DNA of 64,000 nt, from positions 62,001 to 126,000 of the IMG/VR virus record IMGVR_UViG_3300037010_002844; one strand, 5' to 3'. Of the stretch, positions 6,855 through 27,585 are shown piece after piece. Every line of letters begins with the position of its first letter. The stretch's first letter is position 1. Made by a program: the position numbers and the translations under genes. The notes below the pieces were generated by a model that worked only from the letters and a program-made list of their open reading frames with translations, was not told the DNA's origin and ran no database searches.

Positions 6855-7394
6855 TCAGTCCTTGTTAAGGAAGTCGATGATTTCCTCGGTCTCGCGGGCG
6901 AGGTTCTCGTCGTCAACGTTCAACCTCAAGATCCTGCACTTCGACCAACTTGCAAATTCCTCATAGGCGCTGTGAAGGCTGGTCAGCAGCTCTTCTCCAA
7001 TGCTAGGGTCGAGGTCGTCCTTGATACCCGCGTAATTGGAGCGTTGCGCAAAGATCACGCGAGCGCCCAATGATGCCCATGCCTCGTCCATGTGTCGCAG
7101 CATCATCAAGTCGGTCTCACGGCCAAATACCTTTGCATATGCATACTCACACGGAAAGCCTCGGTCGAAGATGACACTGTAGCCCGTTTGCTTCAACAGG
7201 TCATATACACGGGGATCTGCGAAACGCAGTTGATTCAAGAATTTGTCGTTCTTGGTGACCCGCGAGCTTAGAAATGAGGTGTATTCTGAGGTCGCCTTGA
7301 AATACGGAATGCCAGTTACCCGCGAAAGCTCGCGGGCCATCTCGGTCTTACCACAACGATCTGGTCCGACAAAAAACGTTAGTGATTGTTTCAT
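6855..7394 (-). CDS. dNMP kinase (thymidylate-kinase-like), probable hm-dCMP kinase
   Basis: P-loop VGPDRCGKT, IFDR motif, context in the gp42 cluster, and GGAAGG upstream. Confidence 0.8.
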   Translation of the reverse strand: MKQSLTFFVGPDRCGKTEMARELSRVTGIPYFKATSEYTSFLSSRVTKNDKFLNQLRFADPRVYDLLKQTGYSVIFDRGFPCEYAYAKVFGRETDLMMLRHMDEAWASLGARVIFAQRSNYAGIKDDLDPSIGEELLTSLHSAYEEFASWSKCRILRLNVDDENLARETEEIIDFLNKD

Positions 7395-13198: not shown

Positions 13199-13419
13199 GT
13201 GAGCAGGTCCTTCAACAGGTCTTCGATCGCTCCTGCGTTCGGTTCATCAAGCATTGCTTTAGCATACTCTTCTTCAATGTACTCGTCAGTCGGCTGGAGT
13301 TCAACCTTCGTTTCGCTTTTGCGTCGGTAACGTGCCGCGGCCCGTAACAGTTCGATCGGACTCAGACCCATGCGTTGGGCAATGTCATTCAGTGCGATTT
13401 CAAACGGCGGTCTTTTCAT
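13195..13419 (-). CDS. Small hypothetical passenger gene between the halves of intein 6
   Basis: 74-aa ORF; ATGA overlap with the start of dnaE fragment 8. Confidence 0.55.
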   Translation of the reverse strand: MKRPPFEIALNDIAQRMGLSPIELLRAAARYRRKSETKVELQPTDEYIEEEYAKAMLDEPNAGAIEDLLKDLLT

Positions 13420-14449
13420 ACGCTTTTCCTATCCGATGAACGCCAGGTCGAGGATCTTTCAGGATCTCAAAAAGCTTTTTCAAGCAATCAGGTTCGAAGC
13501 GACCGCCATCCTTGTATGAGAACTGATCGTAAGAAATTCGAATGAGTGTCCAATCATGTTTAGTGATGTAATCATCAAGCATTGCATCCATGCACTTCAC
13601 TCGTTCAAAATTATCCTCGCCTTTAATACGTGCATTAAAATGGATGATTCCATCAAATTCAACATAAATGTGTCTTGATCGATCGGCAATGTCAACTTGC
13701 TTTCTTTTAGATTTGTTTGGAAAAGCAACTGACTTGACGACCTGATTATGAACAAAATCATAACCTTCAACGTTTTTCAACAAATCAAACAACGCTAATT
13801 CCGGAATGCTATGCCAAATAGCATGTGCAGCTTTTGTGCACTTTTCGTAGAACTCATCGGGGTTCAACTCACGCCAACGGGCCAGGCGCTCAGCACGTGC
13901 CTTGAGTATCTCAGGCCGGGTTGACGTTAGTCTTGCAACGTCTGATGAACGTTTACGGGCTTCAGGTCGTCGATTAAGTTCTCCCATTAGTTCAGAGCGA
14001 CGTTTCCTCTCGCCCGGATTGCTCGTGATGGCCTCACTGACCGCACGGCCCATCTTTTCCTTGTAGGCAGTCAAATCATCACCGCGTGCCTTCGCTCGTT
14101 TGAGCCAGGCGAAATTCTGCCCACGATGCTTGAAACGCGCTGTCGAGACTTTCGATGTGATTGCGGCAGTCGGGTACGCTTTCAGGTATTCTTCTTTGCT
14201 CATACCATGCGTCCCCGACAAGTGCTTTGCCAGTGCCTTACCCGTGAAGCCACAGACTTGGCATGTGACACTCTCACTGTCACCGAGTATGAATCCTTGG
14301 CACCTAGCTTGGTGTTTTTCGTAGGCCTTCAGGTAGACGAAGAGCCTGCTACATCGGTCACAACGATGCTGAGGCCCCGTTCGGCAATCATCCACAGGGG
14401 CAACATCTCGTTTGTCTCCTTCGTCCTGAACTTGTGATCCCACGTGCAC
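13400..14449 (-). mobile_element. Free-standing homing endonuclease (C2H2 zinc fingers plus Vsr/DUF559-like nuclease); true start uncertain
   Basis: CDRC, CQVCG..HLSGTH and VDIADRSRHIYVEFDGIIHF...WTLIRI. AT-richer, and sits between IntN6 and IntC6. Confidence 0.8.
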
Positions 14450-15030
14450 TTTACCTTCTCTCCGGTCACCAACTCCACTTCTACCAAGTCTAGCTCACCG
14501 TGGTCGTGTTTTGCAACAACAGGGACGAGGATGTTTTTACCTGAATTCTCATCACGAGACATGACCAGGTCGCCGGGTTCGATGTGTTGAAGCTGCTTTG
14601 TCTCTTTGAACGTGCCGTCTGAAAAAAAGGTATTTACTGGTTCCGAAAAGTACAAACTTTTATTGAAGCCGTAGCCCGCGAAGTACAGAATCTTGTCGTA
14701 GAGGTTGTTGGCCACCTTCTCGGTATAACCGTTGGCGATGCAACCCTTGACGAACCCGTCACGGGTCTCTTGGGCTGCCTTCTTTGCCGCCTCACCGCCC
14801 GAGATGCTGCGCTTCATGATTGCGCGACGGACCTCGTCACACTTGTCCTTCGGGAAGCCGGCAGCCTTCTCGGCGAGTTCCATCACCTGTTCCTGAAAAA
14901 TTATGCAGTTATGCACGAGAAGGCCATTTGCGAAGAAGTTGTTGTTCTTCTTGACCTGGATGTCGTACACAGGCTGTGCAGGAACACGCTTGATCGCACG
15001 GATCTTGACGGGAACTACGTCAGGCATCAC
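14329..15030 (-). CDS. dnaE: DNA polymerase III alpha fragment 7: IntC5 (14908-15030) + 83-aa extein + IntN6 (14332-14658)
   Basis: VYDIQV..NNFFANGLLVHN|CIIFQEQVM...FAGYGFNK|SLYFSEPV...CTWDHKF. Confidence 0.93.
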   Translation of the reverse strand: MMPDVVPVKIRAIKRVPAQPVYDIQVKKNNNFFANGLLVHNCIIFQEQVMELAEKAAGFPKDKCDEVRRAIMKRSISGGEAAKKAAQETRDGFVKGCIANGYTEKVANNLYDKILYFAGYGFNKSLYFSEPVNTFFSDGTFKETKQLQHIEPGDLVMSRDENSGKNILVPVVAKHDHGELDLVEVELVTGEKVKCTWDHKFRTKETNEMLPLWMIAERGLSIVVTDVAGSSST

Positions 15031-15344
15031 TTACGCTCCGTTTCACGATGAGTCTGACAAACAATGTGTAATGACATTGAGCGCGACAAAGCATCACTGC
15101 CTAGAACGACTCGGCAAGGGTTGAGATTTTCCCCCACATGACGCATCCATTCTTGCAAAGCGTTGATCAATCGTTGGGCTTCGTTGAAACCCTCATGCGA
15201 GGGTGGAAACTGACAGCAACCTACCAAATCTCTAGTCCCAGGATCATATGCAATGATTCGCAAATTCCCATGAACGTTCATCTCTAGCGTTAGAGATCCA
15301 TAAACATCGTCATCGATCTCGCTAGTGTAAAGATCTGCGCTCAT
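15027..15344 (-). CDS. Hypothetical passenger gene between the halves of intein 5
   Basis: 105-aa ORF; stop overlaps the fragment 7 start. Confidence 0.55.
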   Translation of the reverse strand: MSADLYTSEIDDDVYGSLTLEMNVHGNLRIIAYDPGTRDLVGCCQFPPSHEGFNEAQRLINALQEWMRHVGENLNPCRVVLGSDALSRSMSLHIVCQTHRETERK

Positions 15345-15345
15345 A

Positions 15346-15591
15346 TCATTTTTCTTTCATGTTCAATGATGATGCGCAGAGTTGGCACACTGGTCCATCA
15401 ACACTCAAAACACGTTGACCATGGTATTCGAGCTCCATATCATTTCCGACCTCTTCATAAGCTCGAAATGTGTCGAACCAGTCGGCATACGTGAGATCAT
15501 CACGCTTTCCAAATGCCGTATGTGACTTCATCGTGTTGATAAAGTTCTTGAACGACGTAAGCAACTCCTCTTCAAAATCATCAATCTTCAT
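15346..15591 (-). CDS. Hypothetical passenger gene between the halves of intein 5
   Basis: 81-aa ORF, tightly packed with its neighbour. Confidence 0.55.
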   Translation of the reverse strand: MKIDDFEEELLTSFKNFINTMKSHTAFGKRDDLTYADWFDTFRAYEEVGNDMELEYHGQRVLSVDGPVCQLCASSLNMKEK

Positions 15592-15595
15592 GTCT

Positions 15596-15810
15596 AAATT
15601 GTCCTCAATTTGAGGTGATAGTTCAAGGCATCAGACTCCCAGACGCGGTACACCGTGAAGCCTCAAGTTCTTGTGGCAAGCGTCCATAATTGATCAAGCC
15701 TAAATTGCTTCTTCATCGCAGGTGTTAGTTCATGCTTCGCTGGGTTACTGTGCCAATAGTCGCCGTCGTACTCGATGATGAGGTTGAGTGATGGCACGAC
15801 GAAGTAGCCT
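15596..15810 (-). pseudogene. Truncated Vsr/DUF559-like homing endonuclease remnant
   Basis: Translation FVVPSLNLIIEYDGDYWHSNP...TRT*GFTVYRVWESD; N-terminus missing, in-frame TGA. Confidence 0.65.
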
Positions 15811-15814
15811 GGTT

Positions 15815-16414
15815 TCAGTACTTCATTCCCAAAATCTCGTCTTCAGACGTCAGTTCACCTGCTTGCACCCAACCACGAGGCGTCATGACAAGGTGATCTT
15901 CAGTCAAAGACAAAGTTTCTCCACCCTCCAGCTCAACCTCGATGATGTCACGTACGCCGTTTGAGGCGACAGCGACAACTTCGTCCATCTCGACGGTCTT
16001 CGTCATTTCATTGTATGACGGAAGCTTAGTTCCCACCATTCCTTGTTCAACGATTTGTCTAATGGGAACCTCACCTTGCTCAGTAAGGATATGTGTGTCA
16101 CCCGTCAAACACGAGTATGTCTTCTTCAGGATGTCGTTGACGCGGTGATCGCCCCACTCCAACTCCTTGCCGTCATTCTTCGCCTCCAAGTACAGTCGAT
16201 CGACTTTGGCGGCCAAGGGACCCGGGCGATAGATGCTGGTCAGCGTCGCGATGTCGATGATGCTCTTGGGCTTGCCTTTGACAAAGAGTCGCTGAGCGCC
16301 CTGGCCCGTGCAATTGTGAACAACGACGTCGTTAGCGACGAAATTATGATGATTTCGCACCTCGATGTCGTAGACGTGGCGCTTACCCACGCTGCGTGAT
16401 GACACAAGCTTCAA
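15815..16414 (-). CDS. dnaE: DNA polymerase III alpha fragment 6: IntC4 (16313-16414) + 67-aa extein + IntN5 (15818-16111)
   Basis: VYDIEV.NHHNFVANDVVVHN|CTGQGAQ...SIYRPGP...KKTYS|CLTGDT...LTEDHLVMTPRGW. Confidence 0.93.
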   Translation of the reverse strand: MKLVSSRSVGKRHVYDIEVRNHHNFVANDVVVHNCTGQGAQRLFVKGKPKSIIDIATLTSIYRPGPLAAKVDRLYLEAKNDGKELEWGDHRVNDILKKTYSCLTGDTHILTEQGEVPIRQIVEQGMVGTKLPSYNEMTKTVEMDEVVAVASNGVRDIIEVELEGGETLSLTEDHLVMTPRGWVQAGELTSEDEILGMKY

Positions 16415-16800
16415 GCGTCGTCTCCTTCTTTTCTAGCAACTGTAGGTCATATCCACTGACAAGTGCACACTTGAGCGTCGGATGCAACGTTACGAATGCG
16501 TCAAACTTCTCCCTAGCATCATCACGCCACCAGCCCTTGACTTCCACGTACACCCGCTTAAAGAGCTCCAACGTCGGTCATTGACGATGGAAGATCATGT
16601 ACGCCTCTCTTGTGAGCTGGATCCTGATCTCCTCCTCGCTGAAGCCCTCGTCCATGCAATGACGCCAGTTGTCATACAGGTCGACGACGCCATTCTTTCC
16701 GTTCCCGTTGCCCGCTGAGTGCAGAAAGTACAAAGGGGCGCTACGATGAGCGGAGCGCGTCCGTACAATCACATGTTGCGGAGTCGTGGGCCTGTTGCGT
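16383..16800 (-). pseudogene. Fragmented PD-(D/E)xK homing endonuclease remnant between IntN4 and IntC4
   Basis: Two short ORFs (16578..16772 and 16383..16571). The second reads VYVEVKGWWRDDAREKF, a nuclease motif III segment. Confidence 0.55.
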
Positions 16801-16856
16801 CTCTGTAAGGCGACATGGCCACGGTCGCGGCGAAACCTGCGACCAAAACGCCCGCC

Positions 16857-17333
16857 TCACGTCAATCCACGAGCTTCGTAACCACTGCTAGACCCAATCA
16901 ACTCGTCGTCTTCGGTTAGGTGCTGTGCCTCAACCCACCCGCGATTCTTCGTCAAGATGGGATGATCAGCGGTGCAGACAAGCTTCTTGCCGTCGTCGAA
17001 CACGAGCTCGATGCACTCCTTGGGTCCTTGGTCGTAAACGACGTCGACGACTGATGTGGTGAACTGCTGCTTGACTTCATCGAAGACCGTCACCTCGTCA
17101 CCGACATGGACGTCCTTGATCAACTTGTACGAGTCATCGCCCATCAGCACTGCCGTGTCCTGGTCGACGCACTGGAAGATGCCTGCCCACTTGCCTTTCT
17201 CGTAGACCTCGTAAGGTTTGGGATCGGTGAAATCAATGACGGCCGGGTGCATGTGCTGCTCGAACCAGGTCTTGATGTCATTGAATGATACCGCATTTGT
17301 ATGTGCGTCAACGTTAGCAACGACTTTTGCCAT
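16857..17333 (-). CDS. dnaE: DNA polymerase III alpha fragment 5: 54-aa extein (no IntC) + IntN4 (16860-17171)
   Basis: IDFTDPKPYEVYEKGKWAGIFQ (DnaE DDxxVY...GVFQ)|CVDQDT...CTADHPILTKNRGW. Confidence 0.9.
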   Translation of the reverse strand: MAKVVANVDAHTNAVSFNDIKTWFEQHMHPAVIDFTDPKPYEVYEKGKWAGIFQCVDQDTAVLMGDDSYKLIKDVHVGDEVTVFDEVKQQFTTSVVDVVYDQGPKECIELVFDDGKKLVCTADHPILTKNRGWVEAQHLTEDDELIGSSSGYEARGLT

Positions 17334-17351
17334 GTCTTTGTAAAGGTACTT

Positions 17352-19031
17352 TCACAGGTCCATAACGTACACCGCGTTGGAGCAACCAAAGATCTTAAAA
17401 AGCCTGTGTTCCATCGCCATCTCTTCTTGTGATGCGATCCCCGGAATCGCCCTGACAGCAAATCTATCGATACGATTTTGTCCGTCCGTCCACCAAAACC
17501 TAGGCTGCGTCATGTGATCAAATCTAAAACCAGATAGTTCATACGCCCGGCCAGTGCCACCCAACCTCATGTCACGGTATGTGATCATTTTTTGGTAACC
17601 ATGCTCACGTGACCAATCCCTGGCAGCGTTGATCAACCGCGACATGCCTCCAACGACGATGGTATCGCGGGCCGTTGAAACCCGCGCCAATTCAATTGTC
17701 TTAGATCCCCACTTAGTCTGCTGGTGCGGTTTTCGCAATGTCAATGCACAAATAATGTTTCCAGCAATGTCCTCTAGCCAGAACGAATGCGACGAAGGAG
17801 TGTTTCCATCGAGGTGATTGTTCGCCATGAACTGAGCGGTGATGGCTGGACGACCGCTGCGAAGATGTAGCTTTCGTGCCATCACGCGAGTAGCAAGACC
17901 AAGCTTTACCCTGATCATGCTTTTGATGATGTTTTTCTTTACATCATGGTGCCATTCATCGTCGAAGATATGTAGCAACGACACACCACGCTCAAGAGCG
18001 CGAGTCGACTTGTCTTGGTGATACGATGGTGGAGTACCGGTCGCCTCACTGTGCCAATAGACACCGTTGCACTCGATGGCAATCCTTCCGTTACCTGACA
18101 CGATGTCCAGCTCATAAGGCGCGATTGACTGTCTGTCGTTGGCGATGGCGTTCGAATCGAGCTTGACGAAGAAATCGAACACCTCACGATGCCAGCGAGA
18201 GAAATTAGCCGGGTAGCACGTTGAACACACCTTTCCCTTGTAAAGGACGTTAAAGGGAACAATATCAGGTACGTTACAACTGACGCATGTCACATGCACC
18301 GGTGTTGAGTATCCAGCAAACTCAAATTTTTCGATGTTCCACCTCGACCGCAGTGCATCAACTCGCCGTTCGACCTCTTCGAGAGACAACCGAAAAGGAG
18401 AGTTAGTGCCGTTCTCGATAAGGCGTTTTCTAGTCTCGATGATCGAACGTTTGATATCTTCAGAATTAGCGTTCCGAGACCAATGATTCAAGCGAACGCC
18501 TTCGCCGATCCGTTCTGATCGCCGTTTGATCCTATCGTCAGTTTCTGACGTCTGACCGTGCTGCGTCCAGTGTTTTTCTACTTGCCATTTTTCAGTCAAT
18601 GCTCGAGAGATGTTATGCGCAGCTCTTGTGATAGATTCATTATTTTCTTTAGTTTGTCCTGTTCTCCAGTGCCCGTGTTTTTTGATGAAATCACGACAAC
18701 CTTGTGCGGCCCTTCGAACCGATTCAGACGTTGTTTCTGACAGCCCCTTGTTCCATGCAGGCAATGATTTTGATTTCCGGCTAAGCGCACCTCTTACTTG
18801 AGAGTTCTTCTTGCTACAAACTCCACAGAGACGTTCATATCCCGTTTGAAAGGTCATGAACTTGACCGGCCCTGAACACTGAACGCACGGTCCAGGGTGC
18901 TCTCGAAAAAGAAGGTACGCAGCCTCCGCATTGAGCCCGTGCTTTTTAAGGAGATGTGCGCGGAGCGAATTTAGGCTAGCTTTTCGCAATGGATCATTGC
19001 ACTGTGGGCACCTCGAAGGACACGATGTCAT
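17352..19031 (-). mobile_element. Homing endonuclease: zinc finger, NUMOD3-like repeats, Vsr-like nuclease and C-terminal GNAT-like domain
   Basis: CPQC..HLLKKH, WNKGL, ELDI..IAIECNGVYWHSE, HIFDDEWH, ELARVS..VVGGMSRL..TYRD and YELSGF. Start placed at ATG 19031 (track ORF begins at 19151). Confidence 0.8.
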
Positions 19032-19851
19032 CGCCGGGCCCGAGCTCCCTCGCAAGGATGGTGCCCCTGTTGCTGGTGACGATTCGTTGGTCGCCGTAGA
19101 CGCCTCGTGTCGTTCCATCGTCGAGTTGGATCTCAAACCACCCTCTTTCATGTCGTTCCTTTTTGATGATGAGCTCGATGGCGCGCTCGATGAGCCGCAT
19201 CGTTTCTAGACCTAGGAGGTCGTACTTGATGAACTCTCCGATCTTCTCAAGGTGTTTATAATTTACGCCCTCGACCCAAGGTGACTGTGGCTCGCGGACG
19301 CCGGCCTTGCCTTTGGACGTCACCAAAGGCATCTTGTTGGGCAAATCGTCTGCAATCAGCACACCACCCGCGTGACGACCGAGACTACGATTCTGCTTGA
19401 AGAGGATCTTGATCGACTCGGCGACGACCGGGTACTTCTCAATGAAGCCGCGAAACGACGGGCTGACCGGCTGCTTACACTCTGGGCTACAGCCCTGGCA
19501 GATGGACTTCGACTCCGGGCCCTTAGGAGCCCTGCAGTGGAAGGCCATGGCCTCATCGTAGGTCAAGACGAACAGATTCTTGTCGTCGCCTTCCTTCATC
19601 GTCGCCTTACGGACCTCGTCCTCGACGGTCCGCGTGGCAGCGTTGGTCTCCTCGAATGGGATGCCGTAGAACTTGCCGATATCCTTTACAAGCGTTTTTA
19701 GTTTGAAACAGTTATAATTGCTGATGGGAACGACGTTTTCCCACCCAAAAAAGTTTCGAAGTTCATCAAGAACCTCATCTCGCCTGGCAAGATCGGTGTT
19801 GTGAACAACGACGCTCTTGTTGGACGCCAAAAATGAATGAACGACCATCAC
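18994..19851 (-). CDS. dnaE: DNA polymerase III alpha fragment 4: very short IntC3 (19798-19851) + palm extein + truncated Hint-like tail
   Basis: HSFLASNKSVVVHN|TDLARRDEV, RSLGRHAGGV and IKYDLLGL (third catalytic Asp). Ends in EIQLDDG..GDQRIVTSNRG..ARELGPGDDI. Confidence 0.9.
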   Translation of the reverse strand: MMVVHSFLASNKSVVVHNTDLARRDEVLDELRNFFGWENVVPISNYNCFKLKTLVKDIGKFYGIPFEETNAATRTVEDEVRKATMKEGDDKNLFVLTYDEAMAFHCRAPKGPESKSICQGCSPECKQPVSPSFRGFIEKYPVVAESIKILFKQNRSLGRHAGGVLIADDLPNKMPLVTSKGKAGVREPQSPWVEGVNYKHLEKIGEFIKYDLLGLETMRLIERAIELIIKKERHERGWFEIQLDDGTTRGVYGDQRIVTSNRGTILARELGPGDDIVSFEVPTVQ

Positions 19852-21570
19852 ATGAATCCTAACTCAACTACAGTTGAATTTACATGCGCTCGTTGTGGTC
19901 GAAACCACGAAACGCTACGAGCATTGAAGATCCACGAGGCACGACACAGGCGAGAAGACGCCAGGCCTCCCAAACAGGTGTCAACTTACGCGTGTCCGTG
20001 GTGTGAGGCGTCATATGACAGCGGGCGTAAGTTGACATTGCACTGCACAAAAACGCACCAAAAATCACCCGTCGTTGTGTATGAAACAAGGTACCCAGGG
20101 TGCAGGAAGACGTGCATCGATTGTTGCGACTGGGTCAGGTTCATCGATCAAGAAAAAGGATACCCCGAACGGTGTCCACGTTGTAGCCGAAAACACGCAT
20201 ACGCGTCCAAGGGCACCTCGTCATGGAACAAAGGCCTGACGAAAGACAATGACGAACGCATGTCAGCCAGTGCTGCAAACATGCGAGCTCACTACAAGGA
20301 ACACGGTCACCACAACTCCGACAAGACAAAGGAAAACAACGAAAGCCTTAAACAAAAGGCGGCAAAAATCAGCGACAGCCTGCGGAGGTATTATGCAACG
20401 CACAGCGGCTGGTCACTTGGCCTGACAAAGGATACGTCTAGCATCATTGAATCTCGCAGTAAGAAGATCAGCGCTTCGTTGAAAGGACGATTCTTTAGCG
20501 ACGTAACGCTTGAAAAAATGCGCAAGGCAAAGTTGCTGACGCACGACGAGGTACAAAAACGCCTCAAAGAAAAGCAGCTTAAACTCATTGACGAATATGT
20601 CGATACTGTCACCAAAGCGCGCATCGAATGCACGATATGTTCAACAATATTTGAGCGTTGCGTTGGCGCAGTGTTCAACAACGAGGCCAAGTGTCCCACC
20701 TGCTTTCCGCCTTGGTCAGACAAAACGAGCAGGTGGCAACAGGACGTCTACGCATTTATCCAGACGCTGGCACCTGACGCAGTCCTTAGCGATCGTAAGA
20801 CGCTCGGCGGAATGGAGCTCGACATACTCATTCCATCGCGCATGTTTGCCATCGAGTGCAATGGCCTATACTGGCACAGCGAGGCCGCCAATAGATTTGA
20901 GCACGATCACGCGGAAAAGAAGAGATTGCTGTCCCTCAAAGCCGGCGTATCGCTTTTCACGTTATTTGAGGATGAGTGGCGCGACAAACGACCGATAATC
21001 GAAAGCATGTTGCGCCATCGCCTTGGGTTTTCTACCAAAGTCGATGCGCGTAAGTTGAAAGCAGAACGCTGCGAGCCCGAAGAAGTTCGAGAATTCATCA
21101 ATCAGTGCCACCTCGACGGTCACGTGAGGGCCCAATTTGCCGTGCGATTGGTAACCTCATCGGGCGAAATCGTAGGCGCCTGCAGCCTTAGGTGGGCACG
21201 AAATGGGGCAGACAGAACGACGATTGAGATCGCTCGCCTGTGCTTCAAGCTTGGCACACATGTACGAGGCGGGGTGTCAAAATTGCTATCAAAGGCAAAA
21301 GCTATAGCAAGAGAAAACAATGCAGCGAGGTTGATGTCTTACTCAGACAATCGCTTGGGAGGAAACGGTTATGCCACCTCAGGCATGAAGTTCAACGGTA
21401 CCACAGTCGCTCGCTTCTGGTGGACTGACTTCATGCATCGTTACGACAGGTTCAAGTACCGAGCCAACAAGAAGCAAGGTCTAACAGAAAAACAGGTAGC
21501 GGAGGCTGCCGGCGTTTATCGCATCTATGGCTGTAGCAACTCTCGCTACGTCTTAGACGTCACAGCGTGA
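19837..21570 (+). mobile_element. Homing endonuclease paralogous to 17352-19031, on the opposite strand
   Basis: Two C2H2 fingers, WNKGLTK, ELDILIP..AIECNGLYWHSE, FEDEW, EIARLC..GGVSKLL and SYSDNR. Confidence 0.82.
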
Positions 21571-21872
21571 CGCTAATGTCATCGTCAAACTTTGAGGACG
21601 CATTTTCTTTGAGCCAGAAGATGGCGTCAATTGTGCGCTCGTCGGCGTCGGCGTCATCGCACGACGTAGCCCCATAGTATGGGGGCCAAATCGTGCTCAA
21701 ACCCTTTAACGCGCAGTTTGACCTGACAATCTTGAAATTCAGGATTTTCTGCAGCTCTCGTCTGAGCTATTCTTTCCAGGCCAGACACTATCACATCATC
21801 TGCTCGGCAGAATCGCCGTTGTCTGTAAGCTGCACCGCATCAACGTTGCTCGGACACGGTCCCAACTCCAGC

Positions 21873-22610
21873 TCAAATTTCATAGTTGCGCTCGCTGTGG
21901 TCTGTTCTTCTCTTAGACGCGCACCAATCGCTGCAAAAATTGTCTCCTTCGCCACACGCAAGGAACGTGCCAGGAATGACGCCCATGCAATAACCGACGT
22001 CATGTGATGGATCACCTCCACTTAGAATGGACGTATTGAACGGTACCACGTGGAATCTGTGATCGTCTTCAACAGTCAGGTCGACGTATCTAGCGTTGGA
22101 AGAGCCCCAACCACCGTGCTCGATCGATACGACCTCAACGCTGCCGCATGATGCCATCAATTCATCTCCGACCTTAAGGTCGCGGCAGTACACGATGACG
22201 CCGTCAGCTCTGACAAATTTGTGACCGGGCACCACCAAAATGTGGCCCAACGTACCATCATTGGCCCTAACTCTGACCCAGACAGCGTCCTCGAATGGCC
22301 GCAAATTTCTAGCATAGGTCGCAGTTACTGCGTGTGGCATTCCATCGCCTCCCAGGACGACGTCGCCGACAATGATGTCAACAGCTCGCTTATGAGTGCC
22401 GTCTGTCATGACGACAAGATGGTCCTCGTGGACGCAGTCGATATCAGGAGCACCAGAGTTATGTGTCAGCACCCAATCGCTATCGTTGTTGGACACCCAA
22501 AACGTATGCTGGCCTTCGACCTCGATGTCGATGAGTTCTACACTTTCATCGACAACCTCGATAGCTTCAATTTTGGCCGTGCTTGCTGATGAGATGTTGG
22601 GTTCCTGCAT
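21873..22610 (-). CDS. dnaE: DNA polymerase III alpha fragment 3: IntC2 (22458-22610) + 7-aa extein SGAPDID (22437-22457) + long IntN3
   Basis: LIDIEVEGQHTFWV..VLTHN|SGAPDID|CVHEDH...VPGHKF...DLKVGD...YVDLTVEDDHRF. Confidence 0.9.
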   Translation of the reverse strand: MQEPNISSASTAKIEAIEVVDESVELIDIEVEGQHTFWVSNNDSDWVLTHNSGAPDIDCVHEDHLVVMTDGTHKRAVDIIVGDVVLGGDGMPHAVTATYARNLRPFEDAVWVRVRANDGTLGHILVVPGHKFVRADGVIVYCRDLKVGDELMASCGSVEVVSIEHGGWGSSNARYVDLTVEDDHRFHVVPFNTSILSGGDPSHDVGYCMGVIPGTFLACGEGDNFCSDWCASKRRTDHSERNYEI

Positions 22611-23508
22611 AGTCCCTGTGCTCTAGATTGGCAATCGTATGGTACAAACCTTGTCGACGAAGTTCACCATAGAAGTCATTCATGTACACGACGTCGATGC
22701 GCTGACCAGACGCCACAACGACTTCCCGTGAACGTGCGTTTGAGTTAAGCAACTTTGAGAAACGCGATTTGCCTTCTCGCACACCTTTCAACTCCACGTA
22801 TCGGTCCTCATCACTGAACCAAAAGTCTGGAGTGTAACACTTCTCTTTGCCATCGATGACAACATGGAAAGACCTATGTTCATAGAATGGCATCTTACCG
22901 AGGTGCAAGCAATATCTGTAGTAGTCGGCTTCGAACGAGCTCTTGAAGTACGGGCTGTTTAGGATGTCGGAACGAAAACACGAGCGTCCGTTCACATGTG
23001 AAGCAACCATATCACGTGACTGTGCCTCGCGGGTGCACCGTTTGGAACAGAACCGCGGCACGTAGCTCTTCTTGGTGACGATCGGTTCGCTACAAACTTC
23101 GCATACCAACGTGTGGCGGTCAAACCTCGATGCAGCGAAACATTTGGGTGAACAGAACCTGCGATTGACGTTCTTCGTTGAGAAAGTGCCTAGACACTGT
23201 ACACATGTCAGTGTACGGAGCTCATTCTTTGTCAGCGCTTTCGCAGTGTACTTGTGCCTGCACGCATTCGAACATAGTTTTCTGTTGTTGTGACACTTTG
23301 GAACGTAGAACTCATCGCCGTACTCGACGCACGTCTTCACAAGCCTCGAGGGCATGGGAGCGTGTGACATCAGCTTCCTGTGAGCGACGGCACACTCATC
23401 AGTGCAGTACGGGCGATGGAGCCTACTACCAGAACCCTTGCAGTTGGGCTCATAGTTGAACTGAAACATAATACCACAGTGTTTACACTGTTTCTCAATG
23501 ATGCTCAT
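22567..23508 (-). mobile_element. Homing endonuclease with tandem CxxC...CSxxC zinc repeats and a PD-(D/E)xK nuclease
   Basis: At least four CxxC...CSxxC units, SSFEADY and YTPDF..RYVELKG. ATG at 23508 overlaps the fragment 2 tail. Confidence 0.82.
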
Positions 23509-23992
23509 AGTGGTACGTGTACAGCTCGTCACTCGTCGACAGCTCAGATGTATACTTCTTCACAGGTTGTCCATCAGGACCCACTGTCAACCACACATGA
23601 TTTTCAGAACACGTGAACGTAGTACCATTCACCTTCACGCGGTACGTCTTCTCATGTTTTGTGGTCATGGTGAACGTAACTTTACGGTGTGAGCCATCCT
23701 GTGAGACAACGCTGTCACCGACTTTCACGTCTCGAAGCGCGGACGACGAACCATCTGACATCAATACCTTTGTGTCTGGCGACAGACACCTGTGAACGCT
23801 AAGGAATCGCGCGAAAGGCAGGTCCCAGAACAACGGGTCCAAGTCGGTGATGTATAGGACGTAGGCGACCAGAGAGCCACCGCCCGAATTGTGGACTGCA
23901 ATACCTTCCACGTTGTAAGTGTGGCTGTTTTCCACACACAGGTCTACGACCTCACCCTTATACGGTACGACAGTCTTACTTCTGAGCTTCAT
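23495..23992 (-). CDS. dnaE: DNA polymerase III alpha fragment 2: IntC1 (23888-23992) + 33-aa extein + IntN2 (23498-23788)
   Basis: [21 protein letters not shown]|[27 protein letters not shown]|CLSPDT...CSENHVW. Confidence 0.93.
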
Positions 23993-24076
23993 GATATGCG
24001 TTCGCTCTCTTCATGTAAGCCTTGAGATCCCTGTCTAATAGACATTTGACGAGGATCAGGTAAACTTAGTTGAGTT

Positions 24077-25762
24077 TCATTCAACCTCGATTAGGTCATC
24101 ATCTTCAGTCAAGTGTTGTGCTTCAATCCACCCACGATTCTTCGTCAGAAACTTATGCTCCTTGGTGCACCTGATCTTCTTACCGTCATCAAACTCGAGT
24201 TCTAGCAGCTCCTCATCAACCTGATACCTGAAGATCTGAGTCACCATCTGATCAACACCATATGCATCCTTGATAACGTCGCCCACCTTGATGGTGCCAA
24301 TGGGAGCATGCATGCCGTCAGCCATTAGAACCCGCGTCTCAGGAACGAAACAACCGCGGGCTGGGCCGGTAAGGCACACATTGCGTGCCAGCTCCATGAT
24401 CTTCTGGTAGGAAATGAAGTAGTCAGAGTTTTTCATCACCTTAATGACGCCGAGTTCCTCCTTGAGGCGCGCGATATACTCTGGCTTGTCTTGAAGACCA
24501 CGCTTCACCATGCCCACCTTACAAAGCGAGATGAGGTGATTGAACGAGGTCGTGCCTTCGGGCACCAACAACCTCGTCGGAAACTTGGGCGAACGATCGG
24601 GTGGAATCTCCCCGATGACACTGTGTGCGATATCGTGAGTCCGCTCAATGGCGTCACAGACGACTTCATCGTCATACCAGTCGGTGCCTTCCTTGGAGCG
24701 CTGGTACTCATCCCACATCTGTTGGGCGTTCTTCGGATAGAGCTCACACTTCAGCTCATCCTTCGACTTCGGAATCGCGTCAGGATTGATCTCCTGGTAG
24801 TTCATCCAACCCAGGCGCTTGTAGAGCTCACGGTCCTTCCAACGATCGGGATTATAGTAGTGAGCATCGCCGGTGACGATCAGCTGCTTGTTGAGCCCAT
24901 TGCGACGAGCGAACTCCAGGATCGCGCGGTTGACGAGGTTCTGCGCCGGTAGGCGATTGAACTGCAGCTCGAGGAAGTAGTTTCCTTCGCCGACTGCATC
25001 GACCATGTGCTGGTAGGTATTGCCCACCGCGACAACGCATTTCTCGAGCAGCACAGGGTCACTGAGCAACCGTGCGTCGAGCTCGTCAAACTTGTACTGT
25101 TGGATTTCCTGGAATATGGAGTACGCCGGCATGCCGCCGATACAAGCGCTGCTGACGATGATGTCGCCGCCTTTGGCTGCCTCTTTGAGGACAGCATGGT
25201 CAATGCGCGGGAACTTGTAGAAGCCCTTCAAGAATCCCTTCGAACATGCTGCGAAGATCGCCAACAGGCCCTTCTGGTTCTTGGGCAGAATGACTAGGTG
25301 ATGCCGTCGGTTGACGGGATTGAAGTGTTTGGTCGATTTGGACTCTTCCTCGTTTTCGACAGTCAAGGCGTTGGACATCTCAATGTCCTCAGTCTCATCA
25401 TTTTCATCGATGGTGGCGATGATCTTGGTCTGCAGCTTTTCCTGCTCCTTAGCAAGCTTGGCCGCAACCCTCCTGTCTCCCTTCGCCTGCTCTGCGAGTT
25501 CGACGTCCTTCTTCCATTGCTCCAGGTCGGGATGGTAGTACGCCTCGACGCCGGGAATGTACTTGAACGACTTTCCCTTATTGGCCTTGGCCCACTCCTC
25601 GACCCACAGTTGAGCGTGGGCATAGGAGTTCATGTTCCCGTGCTCGGTGATGGCATGGCCATCGAGCCCGTTCTCCATGCACCACTTGAAGTGTTCATCG
25701 GGATAGCCCAAACCATCGAAGGGCGCATTACGAGAAGCCCGTGTGGTTGTGCAAACCGACAA
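24077..25762 (-). CDS. dnaE: DNA polymerase III alpha fragment 1: PHP domain to GPARG + IntN1 (24080-24352)
   Basis: PFDG, AITEHGNM, PGVEAY, HLVILPKN, SACIGG, YFLELQ, TGDAHY, RLKEEL..I, DYF and TGPARG|CFVPET...CTKEHKFLTKNRGW. The first 13 aa of the track ORF are probably off-frame. Confidence 0.92.
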   Translation of the reverse strand: MSVCTTTRASRNAPFDGLGYPDEHFKWCMENGLDGHAITEHGNMNSYAHAQLWVEEWAKANKGKSFKYIPGVEAYYHPDLEQWKKDVELAEQAKGDRRVAAKLAKEQEKLQTKIIATIDENDETEDIEMSNALTVENEEESKSTKHFNPVNRRHHLVILPKNQKGLLAIFAACSKGFLKGFYKFPRIDHAVLKEAAKGGDIIVSSACIGGMPAYSIFQEIQQYKFDELDARLLSDPVLLEKCVVAVGNTYQHMVDAVGEGNYFLELQFNRLPAQNLVNRAILEFARRNGLNKQLIVTGDAHYYNPDRWKDRELYKRLGWMNYQEINPDAIPKSKDELKCELYPKNAQQMWDEYQRSKEGTDWYDDEVVCDAIERTHDIAHSVIGEIPPDRSPKFPTRLLVPEGTTSFNHLISLCKVGMVKRGLQDKPEYIARLKEELGVIKVMKNSDYFISYQKIMELARNVCLTGPARGCFVPETRVLMADGMHAPIGTIKVGDVIKDAYGVDQMVTQIFRYQVDEELLELEFDDGKKIRCTKEHKFLTKNRGWIEAQHLTEDDDLIEVE

Positions 25763-26175: not shown

Positions 26176-26211
26176 GTCGTCATGGTAAACCGGAAGCGAT
26201 CAGTTTTACAT

Positions 26212-27234
26212 CTAGGCGATGACCTTCCGGAAGTAATCGATGGAACGTTTGAGGCCTTCTGCGAGCTGCACCTTGGGCTCCCACCCTAGACGATTCTGGG
26301 CTTGGGTGATGTCGGGCCGACGCTGCGTCGGGTCATCGACAGGCAGCGGTTTGTAGTCAAACCAACGGGCCACATCGCGGTGAGGTGCCTCGCGCCCACC
26401 GTAGATTTGGTGAATGACCTCCTTCGCCAACTGATTCATCGTGAACTCGTGCGGGTTGCCGAGGTTGATGGGCATCCGCGGGTTGTTGCCCAGATCGCCC
26501 AAGGTCACAATGCCTTTGATCAGGTCGTCCACGTAACAAAAGCTACGTGTCTGTTGACCGTCACCGTAGATCGTCAACTTCTCGCCCTTCAAGGCCTGGA
26601 CGATGAAATTGCTGACGACCCGGCCATCGTATGGGTCCATGTGCGGACCGTAGGTGTTGAAGATCCGGACCATGCGAGCGTCGACACCGTGGGTATGTAG
26701 GTAGTCATAGCACAGGGCCTCTGCCGCACGTTTTCCCTCGTCGTAACAGGCTCTGGGCCCGTAGGAGTTGACGCGACCTCGGTATGACTCGACCTGCGGC
26801 GAACTCTCGGGATCACCATAGACCTCAGAAGTCGAAGCGTGGACCACGATCGATCCATGCGATGCCGCCAGTTCCAGGACGTTCTGGACGCCTAGCGTAC
26901 AGGTCATCATGGTCTCCACGGGCATGCGCTGGTAGATGGGCGGCGATGCTGGGCAGGCGAAGTTGTAGATGATGTCGAAGCGTACCGAGTGCATCGACCC
27001 GGTGTCGTAATCGTGAATCACGCGACTAAAGCGACTGTCTCCATGGACGTCAGCGATATCGCAGTACATCAACGTCGCCAGCGGAAACTTCTTGATCTCA
27101 TCGACCTGAATCGACTCCGGCTTCGACGAACAGAAATTGTCGAGGCCGAGGACCTTGTCACCCGCCCTCAAGTGATGTAGCATCAAGTGCGAACCCAGAA
27201 AACCAGCGGCTCCCGTGACGAGGACAGTCTTCAT
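26212..27234 (-). CDS. uxs: UDP-glucuronate decarboxylase (UDP-xylose synthase, UXS-like SDR)
   Basis: GAAGFLGSHL, NFACPASP, ASTSEVYGDP, VNSYGPRACYDEGKRAAE, RIFNTYGP, DGRVVSNFIVQAL, QTRSFCYVDDL and DDPTQRRPDI. Confidence 0.9.
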   Translation of the reverse strand: MKTVLVTGAAGFLGSHLMLHHLRAGDKVLGLDNFCSSKPESIQVDEIKKFPLATLMYCDIADVHGDSRFSRVIHDYDTGSMHSVRFDIIYNFACPASPPIYQRMPVETMMTCTLGVQNVLELAASHGSIVVHASTSEVYGDPESSPQVESYRGRVNSYGPRACYDEGKRAAEALCYDYLHTHGVDARMVRIFNTYGPHMDPYDGRVVSNFIVQALKGEKLTIYGDGQQTRSFCYVDDLIKGIVTLGDLGNNPRMPINLGNPHEFTMNQLAKEVIHQIYGGREAPHRDVARWFDYKPLPVDDPTQRRPDITQAQNRLGWEPKVQLAEGLKRSIDYFRKVIA

Positions 27235-27243
27235 GCGTCCATT

Positions 27244-27585
27244 CTATCCAATCGTCACGTGCTCTACACTGCCTTTACGCGGGTAGCTTTCGAGATACGC
27301 AATCAACAAGCGTCTTGACACGGGCTCCCAATCAATGCCGGCGCTTCCGCGAGACATTTCGTCGAACCAAAACTGAAAGACGTCGGAGACCATTTGAACC
27401 GCAATGGGCGTTGCTTCCTCGGCATCTGCGAGTTGAAAACCCGCCTCGTTGAAGCGCGCCAGGATTGACAACGCCTCACTCTCGTACTCGTCATCGTGCG
27501 GAGAGTGAAGACCCATCGGATCGACCTCGTAGAGGATTGTAGCCATCTCAATGAGGAGTTCTGCTTTGCTCTTCGCCTTGTCCAT
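27244..27585 (-). CDS. Hypothetical protein
   Basis: 113-aa ORF with DPMGL..DDEYESEA; -10-like TACATT 6 nt upstream. Confidence 0.6.
   Translation of the reverse strand: MDKAKSKAELLIEMATILYEVDPMGLHSPHDDEYESEALSILARFNEAGFQLADAEEATPIAVQMVSDVFQFWFDEMSRGSAGIDWEPVSRRLLIAYLESYPRKGSVEHVTIG

What the first reader, a model, noticed from the sequence alone, without database searches (positions are those of the whole stretch)
26212..27234. Phage UDP-xylose synthase may supply a pentose for DNA glycosylation
Seen: intact UXS motifs, placed next to dnaE rather than among structural genes. Established: UXS converts UDP-glucuronate to UDP-xylose, and a C4-epimerase converts that to UDP-L-arabinopyranose. 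Inference: with the epimerase at 2440-3399 this gives xylosyl- or L-arabinosyl-hmC by a route distinct from the arabinose-5-phosphate-isomerase route reported for arabinosylated T4-like phages.
Basis: inference. Interest (0 to 1): 0.6.

Follow-up and report, generated by a model that had tools for sequence, protein, structure and literature searches.

The report
Jumbo-phage UDP-xylose synthase, sugar destination unresolved
A 309-kb phage carries a genuine UDP-xylose synthase beside its DNA polymerase and near a hydroxymethylcytosine, glycosyltransferase and epimerase gene set, so it may put a pentose on its DNA, but the sugar could about as well feed the phage's large glycan-building gene cluster.

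Summary
Window 26212-27234 (-) is an intact 340-aa UDP-glucuronate decarboxylase (UXS). It matches human UXS1 at E=4.5e-83, against 2e-32 for the next SDR, and keeps all six UXS active-site residues. It lies upstream of the first dnaE fragment.

A T4 gp42-like dCMP hydroxymethylase (1595-2254) sits next to the 4-epimerase (2440-3399), a GT-B glycosyltransferase (4554-5891) and a dNMP-kinase-like gene. This block is conserved in dozens of uncultivated jumbo phages.

Three results link UXS to it:
- One relative has a tight run of UXS, UDP-galactopyranose mutase, kinase, GT, epimerase and ThyA-like genes.
- UXS and a GalE-like SDR that sits beside the epimerase never co-occur (26 records versus about 20, none with both).
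- The cultured Pseudomonas phage QdP_Psa3 carries UXS and Ugd inside a ThyA/nucleotidase/kinase block.

Against it:
- Relatives with no ThyA-family gene still keep the epimerase.
- One complete relative keeps UXS and the epimerase with no GT in the block.
- All near-complete relatives carry a multi-GT glycan cluster holding a Ugd-like gene, which is an equally good sink.
- The epimerase most resembles UDP-HexNAc 4-epimerases.

The sugar and its acceptor remain untested. I put DNA pentosylation at about 0.42 and glycan-only use at about 0.40.

The parts
26212..27234 (-). UDP-glucuronate decarboxylase (UDP-xylose synthase, UXS), 340 aa
   Evidence: Human UXS1 E=4.5e-83 against 2e-32 for the next SDR. 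Active-site residues T135, S136, E137, Y164, K168 and R305 are kept here and in all 80 viral homologues.
27244..27585 (-). 113-aa ORF of unknown function. Its stop lies 9 nt before the UXS start, so it is probably co-translated with UXS.
   Evidence: No Pfam, NCBIfam or PHROG hit. Homologues lie directly upstream of UXS in 15 related loci. Junction read.
12068..25762 (-). dnaE (Pol III alpha) split into several ORFs by intein and homing-element insertions. It separates UXS from the hmC block.
   Evidence: PHP, Pol III alpha, Hint/intein, finger and HHH_6 domains lie on separate ORFs. The same pieces form one 1069-1304-aa ORF in relatives, where UXS lies only 7-10 kb from the block.
6855..7394 (-). 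dNMP/thymidylate-kinase-like P-loop protein, 179 aa
   Evidence: PHROG 761 thymidylate kinase 9.6e-10. AAA_28 2.6e-5, below Pfam's cut-off. It is syntenic at the head of the block in most relatives.
6170..6853 (-). 227-aa ORF with a weak methyltransferase-like hit, present in a subset of relatives
   Evidence: Methyltransf_23 E=0.0037, below cut-off. Synteny.
4554..5891 (-). GT-B fold (GT4-like, retaining type) glycosyltransferase, 445 aa. Candidate DNA glycosyltransferase.
   Evidence: No Pfam, NCBIfam or PHROG hit. ESM Atlas places it in viral-only clusters next to GT1/GT4 families. AF2 model pLDDT 86. Foldseek hits BshA, MshA, HepE and GlgM at E about 1e-12. No homologue in 50,697 deposited phage records.
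3432..4226 (-). 264-aa ORF of unknown function. Only its N-terminal 80-160 residues are conserved, and only in a few relatives.
   Evidence: No family hit. No usable Atlas hit. Homologues are of variable length.
2440..3399 (-). NAD-dependent nucleotide-sugar 4-epimerase-type SDR (EPI), 319 aa
   Evidence: Epimerase 6e-51. Nearest solved relatives are a capsular biosynthesis protein, WbgU, WbpP and archaeal UDP-GlcNAc 4-epimerases. It has Ser and Thr where UXS has Glu120 and Arg277, so it is not a decarboxylase. It lies directly downstream of dnaE, or of the transferase, in more than 70 related loci.
1595..2254 (-). dCMP hydroxymethylase (T4 gp42 type), 219 aa, TTG start
   Evidence: T4 gp42 E=8.3e-76, against 3.6e-13 for ThyA. 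It is the only ThyA-family gene in the genome. Cys148 is kept. It has Asp at the ThyA-D169 position, so it lacks the D169N signature of 5hoC synthases, and Asp at the ThyA-N177 position.

Best explanation
The ORF encodes a working UDP-xylose synthase. It converts UDP-glucuronate, from the host or from the phage's own Ugd-like enzyme, into UDP-xylose, a sugar nucleotide that most bacteria do not make.

It belongs to the same sugar pathway as the 4-epimerase at 2440-3399, which would turn UDP-xylose into UDP-L-arabinose. In this phage the most likely consumer is the GT-B glycosyltransferase at 4554-5891. That enzyme would transfer the pentose (xylose, or L-arabinose after epimerisation) onto 5-hydroxymethylcytosine in phage DNA. 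The hmC would be made before replication by the gp42-like hydroxymethylase and the kinase-like gene. The late glycan cluster may draw on the same pool.

Shown at sequence level: the identity and intact active sites of UXS and the hydroxymethylase, the GT-B fold, the epimerase type, the conserved gene order, the UXS/SDR2 exclusivity and the L171 gene run.

Inferred: every enzyme activity, the donor sugar of the GT, DNA as the acceptor, and UDP-xylose as the epimerase's substrate.
For: 1. UXS identity.
2. A complete-looking hmC block, kinase-GT-(u264)-EPI-hydroxymethylase, lies on the same strand as UXS. It is conserved in the clade. UXS is 7-10 kb from it wherever dnaE is uninterrupted.
3. In L171 the genes form one tight same-strand run: UXS 6317-7309, a UDP-galactopyranose mutase homologue 7299-8393 (E. 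coli Glf E=5e-131), kinase, GT, EPI and a ThyA-like gene. In L032 UXS has moved to about 1 kb upstream of a Glyco_trans_1_2 GT, inside the block.
4. UXS and SDR2, a 329-aa GalE-like SDR directly upstream of EPI, are mutually exclusive. None of 26 UXS-bearing records has SDR2. About 20 SDR2-bearing records lack UXS. The EPI tree needs at least 7 switches, of which starred branches force at least 3. Each transferase type (GT-B445, GT12, carbamoyltransferase) occurs with either partner.
5. An unrelated cultured lineage, Pseudomonas phage QdP_Psa3, has UXS (hUXS1 E=4e-79) four genes after a ThyA-family gene, an HD nucleotidase and a dNMP kinase. A full-length Ugd lies 3.5 kb further on. A GT-B-like ORF and an SDR sit next to its DNA polymerase. 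The whole record has no GT2 hit and only that one weak GT1 hit.
6. The nucleotide-sugar enzymes of the glycan cluster (PseB-like, PseC-like, acetyltransferase, Ugd-like) are encoded inside that cluster. UXS and EPI are not.
Against: 1. EPI, with or without SDR2, sits right after dnaE in at least 12 relatives with no ThyA-family gene anywhere in the record, including a 100% and a 93% complete genome. So EPI does not depend on hydroxymethyl-pyrimidine DNA.
2. The complete relative G009 keeps UXS and EPI but has a carbamoyltransferase and no GT in the block. G070, a fragment, has UXS and EPI but no ThyA gene. G005 has UXS but no EPI.
3. Multi-GT glycan clusters are present in every near-complete relative. 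In this genome the cluster runs on into a baseplate gene and holds the Ugd-like gene. In G040 SDR2 lies inside the glycan cluster.
4. Seven large unrelated phages with UXS have no ThyA-family gene. One has UXS next to a WavE/FkbM LPS-type protein.
5. EPI's nearest solved relatives act on UDP-HexNAc, not on pentoses.
6. QdP_Psa3's ThyA-family enzyme has Asn at the N177 position, the uracil type, so it could be an ordinary thymidylate synthase.
7. There is no chemical or expression evidence of any kind.
Confidence: 0.42

Rival explanations
1. Glycan-only sink. UXS, with EPI, supplies UDP-xylose or UDP-L-arabinose to the phage's late glycan system. That system has at least 7 glycosyltransferases, a methyltransferase, PseB/PseC-like enzymes, an acetyltransferase and a Ugd-like dehydrogenase, at genome positions 208.9-233.5 kb. 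It would decorate virion (tail or baseplate) proteins or a host surface polymer. On this reading the hmC block uses another donor, and the position of UXS beside dnaE is historical.
For: - The cluster's composition, and its position just before a baseplate wedge gene.
- The Ugd-like gene, the only phage-encoded candidate source of UDP-GlcA (the host may also supply it), lies in this cluster in both UXS-bearing and SDR2-bearing genomes.
- Clusters of this kind occur in all near-complete relatives, including those without a ThyA gene that still keep EPI with or without SDR2.
- SDR2 lies inside the cluster in G040.
- UXS occurs in ThyA-less phages of other lineages, once beside a WavE/FkbM protein.
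- G009 keeps UXS and EPI without a GT in the block.
Against: - UXS and EPI are never encoded inside the glycan cluster in UXS-bearing genomes. They are about 120 kb away here.
- The L171 run UXS-mutase-kinase-GT-EPI-ThyA and the L032 rearrangement put UXS inside the base-modification block.
- QdP_Psa3 has UXS and Ugd but no glycan cluster.
Confidence: 0.4
2. Host takeover. The phage UXS drains host UDP-glucuronate and/or makes UDP-xylose as a feedback inhibitor of host UDP-glucose dehydrogenase. That would shut down capsule, EPS or lipid A sugar pathways and spare uridine nucleotides for replication. The xylose itself would not be transferred anywhere.
For: - UXS sits with replication and nucleotide-metabolism genes in four lineages: dnaE here, helicases in QdP_Psa3 and LR756500, and Pol B in L087.
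- Loss of UXS1 depletes pyrimidines in human cells (abstract of PMC12666321).
- That UDP-xylose feedback-inhibits Ugd is established biochemistry, cited from my own knowledge.
Against: - The phage and QdP_Psa3 themselves encode Ugd-type enzymes, which works against shutting that step down.
- The exclusivity with an epimerase-type SDR and the L171 run with a mutase and a GT point to a biosynthetic product.
Confidence: 0.08
3. UXS feeds DNA modification but EPI does not act on its product. Xylose would be transferred directly to hmC. EPI would make a different sugar, such as UDP-GalNAc, UDP-Gal or UDP-GalA, for a second addition or for the glycan cluster.
For: - G005 has UXS, a GT, a kinase and a gp42-like hydroxymethylase but no EPI.
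- EPI most resembles UDP-HexNAc 4-epimerases.
- EPI is present in phages without UXS.
Against: - UXS and EPI occur together in 25 of the 26 UXS-bearing records that were checked (G005 lacks EPI), and in one gene run in L171.
- The UXS/SDR2 exclusivity suggests a shared pathway with EPI.
Confidence: 0.1

Closest known systems
T4 glucosyl-hmC system (gp42 dCMP hydroxymethylase, gp1 dNMP kinase, alpha- and beta-glucosyltransferases)
   Same: - A gp42 orthologue, about 60% identical over 200 residues by eye from the alignment, with the catalytic Cys and the cytosine-specifying Asp.
- A kinase-like gene.
- A GT-B fold transferase beside them.
   Different: - The GT has no sequence similarity to any deposited phage protein.
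- Two nucleotide-sugar SDRs, UXS and EPI, accompany the block, whereas T4 simply uses host UDP-glucose.
- A dCTPase was not looked for.
Arabinosylated 5-hydroxycytosine of RB69, DLP3 and HY126-type phages (PMC13326640, PMC6024577)
   Same: A pentose on a C5-oxygenated cytosine, installed by phage GTs, with phage-encoded synthesis of the sugar donor.
   Different: - Those phages start from ribulose-5-P through arabinose-5-P isomerase to NDP-arabinofuranose. Their ThyA homologue makes 5-hydroxy-dCMP and carries a D169N signature.
- Here the hydroxymethylase keeps Asp at that position.
- Here the donor would come from UDP-GlcA by decarboxylation, giving D-xylose or L-arabinose.
- The Uxs/Uxe route was only floated as a possibility for RB69 in 2018.
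Sinorhizobium meliloti Uxs/Uxe pathway (UDP-GlcA to UDP-Xyl to UDP-L-Ara). Gu et al. 2011, as cited in PMC6024577; the paper itself was not held.
   Same: A UXS plus a 4-epimerase-type SDR in one genome, and in one gene run in relative L171.
   Different: - The phage EPI could not be compared with SmUxe because no sequence was available through the tools.
- The phage genes are 23 kb apart in this window.
- The cellular pathway feeds polysaccharide.
Shewanella phage Thanatos pentose-modified cytosine (PMC12838424)
   Same: A pentose-type adduct on cytosine, and a phage enzyme able to make UDP-xylose.
   Different: Thanatos makes UDP-xylose with a pyrophosphorylase from xylose-1-P, has RB69-like genes, and its adduct is a deoxypentose of unsettled identity. 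No UXS is involved.
Rhizobium phage RL38J1 (Pootjesviridae) glycosylated cytosine with a phage NDP-sugar mutase (PMC13326640)
   Same: A UDP-galactopyranose-mutase-type gene inside a DNA glycosylation cluster, as in relative L171.
   Different: - RL38J1 uses hexoses (galactose and glucose) on 5hoC.
- L171 adds UXS and a 4-epimerase, which would allow UDP-L-arabinofuranose.
- The window's own genome has no mutase.
Human UXS1 and bacterial UXS enzymes
   Same: The same extended-SDR fold and all six active-site residues.
   Different: A roughly 26-residue insertion after the first beta-alpha-beta unit (query residues 43-68 are unaligned), and a viral, replication-module context.

Membership tests
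UDP-glucuronate decarboxylase / UDP-xylose synthase (extended SDR) | N-terminal GxxGxxG NAD-binding motif | tested here: met
   G8-A-A-G-F-L-G14. Aligned to the hUXS1 N-terminus.
UDP-glucuronate decarboxylase / UDP-xylose synthase (extended SDR) | SDR catalytic triad Thr118/Tyr147/Lys151 (hUXS1 numbering, PMC3438964) | tested here: met
   T135, Y164 and K168.
UDP-glucuronate decarboxylase / UDP-xylose synthase (extended SDR) | UXS-specific Ser119, Glu120 and Arg277, which are replaced in non-decarboxylating epimerases | tested here: met
   S136, E137 and R305, kept in 80 of 80 viral homologues. The neighbouring EPI has S and T at the Glu120 and Arg277 positions.
UDP-glucuronate decarboxylase / UDP-xylose synthase (extended SDR) | Closer to characterised UXS than to any other SDR subfamily | tested here: met
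   282 bits to hUXS1 against 116 bits to the next chain.
UDP-glucuronate decarboxylase / UDP-xylose synthase (extended SDR) | Passes a curated family model | tested here: inconclusive
   All NCBIfam equivalogs hit are far below their cut-offs: dTDP-glucose dehydratase 117 against 365, and bifunctional UDP-4-keto-pentose/UDP-xylose synthase 84 against 294. No plain UXS model appeared in the list.
UDP-glucuronate decarboxylase / UDP-xylose synthase (extended SDR) | Converts UDP-GlcA to UDP-Xyl | not testable with these tools
   Needs an enzyme assay.
hmC-based DNA glycosylation system (T4 type) | dCMP hydroxymethylase | tested here: met
   E=8.3e-76 to T4 gp42. Cys148 and both Asp residues are kept.
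hmC-based DNA glycosylation system (T4 type) | Kinase for hm-dCMP | tested here: inconclusive
   A 179-aa P-loop protein. PHROG thymidylate kinase 9.6e-10. The Pfam hit is below cut-off.
hmC-based DNA glycosylation system (T4 type) | dCTPase that excludes dCTP from DNA | not tested
hmC-based DNA glycosylation system (T4 type) | Glycosyltransferase acting on hmC in DNA | tested here: inconclusive
   A GT-B fold protein lies between the kinase-like gene and EPI. It has no similarity to known DNA GTs or to any deposited phage protein. The acceptor is unknown.
hmC-based DNA glycosylation system (T4 type) | Glycosylated base in virion DNA | not testable with these tools
   Needs nucleoside mass spectrometry.
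Uxs/Uxe UDP-L-arabinose pathway | UDP-xylose 4-epimerase | tested here: inconclusive
   EPI is a 4-epimerase-type SDR, but its nearest solved relatives are UDP-HexNAc enzymes. The link to UXS rests on co-occurrence, exclusivity with SDR2 and the L171 run.
Uxs/Uxe UDP-L-arabinose pathway | Source of UDP-glucuronate (Ugd) | tested here: inconclusive
   The Ugd-like gene has only the N-terminal and central domains (319 aa). The next 131-aa ORF shows no similarity to anything. The host may supply UDP-GlcA.

The most novel reading that the evidence does not exclude
A widespread, so far uncultivated group of jumbo phages, and independently the cultured QdP_Psa3-like Pseudomonas phages, decorate hydroxymethylated pyrimidines in their DNA with D-xylose or L-arabinose. 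The sugar would be made from UDP-glucuronate by a phage UXS plus a 4-epimerase, and in one lineage also a pyranose-furanose mutase. This DNA sugar and donor route have not been described. The phages would diversify the modification by swapping cassette parts: UXS against a GalE-like SDR, three transferase types, and gp42-type against MilA-type hydroxymethylase.
Probability: 0.35. Interest if true: 0.8.

Novelty: new variant of a known kind. Interest (0 to 1): 0.55.

Why it matters
Sugars on phage cytosines decide which restriction, type IV and CRISPR defences a phage escapes, and they hamper sequencing and engineering. So far glucose, arabinose made from ribulose-5-P, and galactose/glucose chains are established, and Thanatos carries a deoxypentose of unsettled identity.

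A UXS-based pentose route would add a new donor pathway and probably a new adduct (xylosyl- or L-arabinosyl-hmC). It would show modular swapping of sugar-donor enzymes within one hypermodification cassette. It is directly testable, because QdP_Psa3-like phages are in culture.

If the sugar instead goes to virion glycans, the finding is an ordinary auxiliary nucleotide-sugar gene.

Tried and rejected
- **Deposited phage records.** A nucleotide search of 20000-34000 found nothing. GT-B445 has no protein match there either.
- **EPI substrate by bacterial gene neighbourhood.** The genome-contig scan returned only 27-38% relatives, which is uninformative. The 120 best word-search hits are all clade members named only 'nucleoside-diphosphate-sugar epimerase' or similar.
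- **Unknown ORF u264.** No family hit and no Atlas hit, and only a short N-terminal stretch is conserved. I dropped it.
- **g133 (28880-30031), always near UXS.** I folded it in case it was a hidden GT. It is an all-helical repeat-like protein (pLDDT 80, pTM 0.40), not a GT. I ran no fold search on it.
- **Promoter and terminator scans** around UXS and the hmC block gave nothing above shuffled expectation.
- **Co-occurrence of UXS with the glycan cluster or the Ugd-like gene.** Both occur across UXS-bearing and UXS-lacking relatives, so they do not discriminate.
- **The gene after EPI in ThyA-less relatives.** I checked whether it was a hidden base-modifying enzyme. It is an IMPDH/GMP-reductase family protein.
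- **The 'Aphanizomenon/Planktothrix phage' UXS hits** lie in a Wzy/export polysaccharide locus on an identical 42.6-kb circular record. I did not use them as phage evidence.
- **The Gu et al. 2011 Uxs/Uxe paper was not held**.
Full report
**1. The object**

The window is positions 62001-126000 of a single-contig 309,433-bp virus record (GC 55.6%, CheckV 91% complete). The ORF at 26212-27234 (-) is intact, starts with ATG and encodes 340 aa.
- It carries extended-SDR domains.
- Among solved proteins it matches human UDP-xylose synthase far better than anything else: E=4.5e-83 and 282 bits, against 2e-32 and 116 bits for the next chain.
- The hUXS1 mechanism paper names six active-site residues: the SDR triad Thr118/Tyr147/Lys151, and Ser119/Glu120/Arg277, which are peculiar to UXS and replaced in 4-epimerases (PMC3438964).
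- The phage protein has T135, S136, E137, Y164, K168 and R305 at these positions. So do all 80 viral homologues I fetched.
- NCBIfam has no model that it passes.

I accept it as a UXS at sequence level. Activity is untested.

**2. Its surroundings in the window**

- UXS is preceded by a conserved 113-aa ORF whose stop lies 9 nt before the UXS start.
- It is followed, 450 nt downstream, by the first piece of dnaE.
- Further upstream lie a Dps-like DNA-binding protein, an HNH endonuclease and two DNA methyltransferases.
- dnaE is broken by intein and homing insertions into pieces spread over 12068-25762.
- Beyond dnaE, on the same strand, comes a block:
  - a thymidylate-kinase-like P-loop gene (6855-7394);
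  - a 227-aa ORF;
  - a 445-aa protein with no family hit that is a GT-B, GT4-like glycosyltransferase by language-model and structure neighbours and by an AF2 model (pLDDT 86; Foldseek hits BshA, MshA, HepE and GlgM);
  - a 264-aa unknown;
  - the 4-epimerase-type SDR (2440-3399);
  - a 219-aa protein that matches T4 dCMP hydroxymethylase at E=8e-76.
- The hydroxymethylase is the only ThyA-family gene in the genome. It keeps the catalytic Cys and has Asp at the position of ThyA Asn177, which specifies cytosine; that this residue specifies cytosine is established knowledge of gp42 Asp179. It also has Asp at the ThyA-D169 position, not the Asn that marks 5-hydroxy-dCMP synthases (PMC13326640).

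The phage therefore very probably makes hmC, and it has a candidate DNA glycosyltransferase and an epimerase wedged into the same block. Both strengthen its idea.

**3. The epimerase**

EPI has Ser and Thr where UXS has Glu120 and Arg277, so it is an epimerase type and not a second decarboxylase. Its nearest solved relatives are a capsular biosynthesis protein, WbgU, WbpP and archaeal or Pseudomonas UDP-GlcNAc 4-epimerases (E 1e-54 to 1e-44). UDP-GlcA 4-epimerase and GalE are more distant. Nothing shows that it accepts UDP-xylose, and nothing excludes it.

**4. A second glycosylation system**

At genome positions 208.9-233.5 kb a plus-strand cluster encodes:
- two GT2 and five GT1/GT4-type transferases;
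- a SAM methyltransferase;
- PseB-like and PseC-like enzymes;
- a hexapeptide acetyltransferase;
- a Ugd-like dehydrogenase.

A baseplate wedge gene follows it. The Ugd-like protein has only the N-terminal and central domains. This cluster is an obvious alternative consumer of UDP-xylose.

**5. Relatives**

UXS homologues (50-62% identity) occur in 80 IMG/VR loci. About 23 of them belong to a syntenic jumbo-phage group with the order u383, Dps, g129, UXS, dnaE, kinase, GT-B445, (u264), EPI, ThyA-family gene, HslV. Where dnaE is one ORF, UXS is 7-10 kb from the block.

The parts are exchangeable:
- The ThyA-family gene is gp42-like in some records and MilA-like (CMP hydroxymethylase, E=9e-42) in others.
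- GT-B445 is replaced by Glyco_trans_1_2 GTs in some records and by a NodU/CmcH-type carbamoyltransferase in others.

A profile search with EPI brought 80 loci, most of them new. EPI sits immediately after dnaE, or after the transferase, throughout.

**6. Links between UXS and the block**

- **(a) The L171 gene run.** In L171 (52-kb contig, GC 41%) the genes are one tight run with abutting or overlapping ends. In order they are UXS, a UDP-galactopyranose mutase homologue (E. coli Glf E=5e-131), kinase, GT, EPI and a ThyA-like gene. UXS to 4-epimerase to mutase is a chemically coherent route from UDP-xylose through UDP-L-arabinopyranose to UDP-L-arabinofuranose. That bacterial mutases accept UDP-L-arabinose is my own knowledge. 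EPI plus the mutase could also make UDP-galactofuranose.
- **(b) The L032 rearrangement.** UXS has moved to the far side of dnaE and lies about 1 kb upstream of the replacement GT.
- **(c) Exclusivity with SDR2.** Many relatives carry a 329-aa GalE-like SDR ('SDR2'; best hit the UDP-glucose 4-epimerase of PDB entry 4zrm, 2e-47) directly upstream of EPI.
  - None of 26 UXS-bearing records has SDR2.
  - About 20 SDR2-bearing records, plus 3 with a more distant SDR2-like gene, lack UXS. None has both.
  - On a quick ML tree of EPI (49 rows) the two states need at least 7 switches, at least 3 of them forced by well-supported branches.
  - Each transferase type occurs with either partner.
  - This looks like two alternative occupants of one pathway slot next to EPI.
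  - Caveats: it is a single-gene tree with weak resolution, the sequences are related, and many records are fragments.
- **(d) An unrelated cultured phage.** Pseudomonas phage QdP_Psa3 (PV055685.1) has a ThyA-family gene, an HD 5'-deoxynucleotidase, a dNMP kinase, UXS (hUXS1 E=4e-79), a helicase and a full-length Ugd within 11 kb. A GT-B-like ORF plus an SDR sit next to its DNA polymerase. The whole genome has no GT2 hit and only that one weak GT1 hit. Its GT and second SDR are not orthologous to those here, so the kit was assembled independently. Its ThyA-family enzyme has Asn at the N177 position, so it acts on dUMP and could even be a plain thymidylate synthase.

**7. Evidence against a DNA role**

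- At least 12 relatives with EPI (with or without SDR2) have no ThyA-family gene in the whole record, including genomes estimated 100% and 93% complete. They do have GT clusters. The gene after EPI there is an IMPDH/GMP-reductase family protein.
- G009 (complete) keeps UXS and EPI with a carbamoyltransferase and no GT in the block.
- G070 (a fragment) has UXS and EPI but no ThyA gene.
- G005 has UXS without EPI.
- In G040 the SDR2 orthologue lies among the glycan-cluster GTs.
- The Ugd-like gene belongs to the glycan cluster in UXS-bearing and SDR2-bearing genomes alike.
- Seven large phages of other lineages carry UXS with no ThyA-family gene. One has it beside a WavE/FkbM protein.

EPI, and by association UXS, may therefore be core nucleotide-sugar genes of this phage group that primarily serve glycans. 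On that reading the base-modification genes merely inserted around EPI.

**8. Weighing**

The L171 run, the L032 move, QdP_Psa3 and the placement outside the glycan cluster favour DNA. The ThyA-less relatives, G009 and the base rate in other phages favour glycans. I cannot separate the two with sequence data.
- UXS feeds DNA pentosylation, alone or together with glycans: about 0.42.
- Glycan-only use: about 0.40.
- The remainder goes to host takeover or something else.
- Within the DNA reading, xylose against L-arabinose is open. It depends on EPI's untested specificity.

**9. Literature**

In the held library I found no report of a UXS-based donor for phage DNA.
- The Uxs/Uxe route was mentioned only as a hypothetical for RB69 (PMC6024577).
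- RB69, DLP3 and HY126-type phages are now shown or proposed to use ribulose-5-P, arabinose-5-P and then NDP-arabinofuranose, on 5-hydroxycytosine (PMC13326640).
- Thanatos makes UDP-xylose with a pyrophosphorylase (PMC12838424).

If the DNA reading is right, this is a new variant of a known kind of system.

**10. Limits**

- No read or expression data could be obtained.
- Gene calls outside the listed ORFs come from my own simple ORF picker.

Noticed in passing
window 12068-25762 (- strand): dnaE (Pol III alpha) is split into at least six separate ORFs, with Hint/intein pieces and other inserted ORFs (among them two paralogous ORFs of about 380-436 aa, one on each strand) between them. In relatives the same pieces form a single 1069-1304-aa ORF (L019:11616-14825, L024:12478-16392). 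Whether the pieces are joined by protein splicing, split inteins or introns was not examined.
   Followed up: partly
G000:C1:222383-223734 (outside the window; L008:14383-15734): The Ugd-like dehydrogenase has only the NAD-binding and central domains (319 aa, matching residues 1-294 of enzymes of about 420 aa). The overlapping 131-aa ORF after it has no detectable similarity. The same short form (298-359 aa) recurs in at least 10 relatives, so it is not an assembly error. How it binds UDP-sugar is unclear.
   Followed up: partly
L024:16934-18700 (G009); also L126, L127, L135, L187: In some relatives a NodU/CmcH-type carbamoyltransferase (588 aa) takes the place of the glycosyltransferase beside the MilA-like cytosine hydroxymethylase. 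This suggests an O-carbamoylated hydroxymethyl-pyrimidine, or a carbamoylated sugar, in DNA.
   Followed up: no
L171:6317-11904 (IMGVR_UViG_3300035199_000755): A tight run of UXS, UDP-galactopyranose mutase, kinase, Glyco_trans_1_2 GT, 4-epimerase and a ThyA-like gene. It is the most compact candidate cassette for a furanosyl pentose (or Galf) DNA modification.
   Followed up: partly
PV055685.1 (Pseudomonas phage QdP_Psa3) 1-13517 and 108748-112633: This cultured 115-kb phage has a ThyA-family gene, an HD nucleotidase, a dNMP kinase, UXS and a full-length Ugd. A GT-B-like ORF, an SDR and a 467-aa unknown sit next to its DNA polymerase. An Acb3-like CBASS inhibitor is also in the block. No DNA modification has been reported for it in the papers held.
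   Followed up: partly
window 38-583 and 587-1132 (- strand): Two tandem HslV/proteasome-like peptidase genes lie directly downstream of the hydroxymethylase and are conserved in most relatives.
   Followed up: no
window 33125-33907 and 34636-35427 (- strand): Two DNA methyltransferase genes (PHROG 67 type) lie 6-8 kb upstream of UXS, so the phage probably also methylates its DNA.
   Followed up: no
window 8345-11404 (+ strand): A 1019-aa protein with leucine-rich-repeat-variant (LRV) repeats is the only long plus-strand gene in this stretch. It sits between the hmC block and the last dnaE piece.
   Followed up: no
G000:C1:223873-226800 (L008:15873-18800): A NadR-like NMN adenylyltransferase-Nudix fusion, a NAMPT and a dual-specificity phosphatase follow the glycan cluster. 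This is a phage NAD salvage set.
   Followed up: no
LR756500.1:229370-260311 (L116): In a 462-kb uncultured phage the UXS homologue (47% identity) sits directly before a DnaB-like helicase. The genome's ThyA-family gene is 93 kb away.
   Followed up: partly
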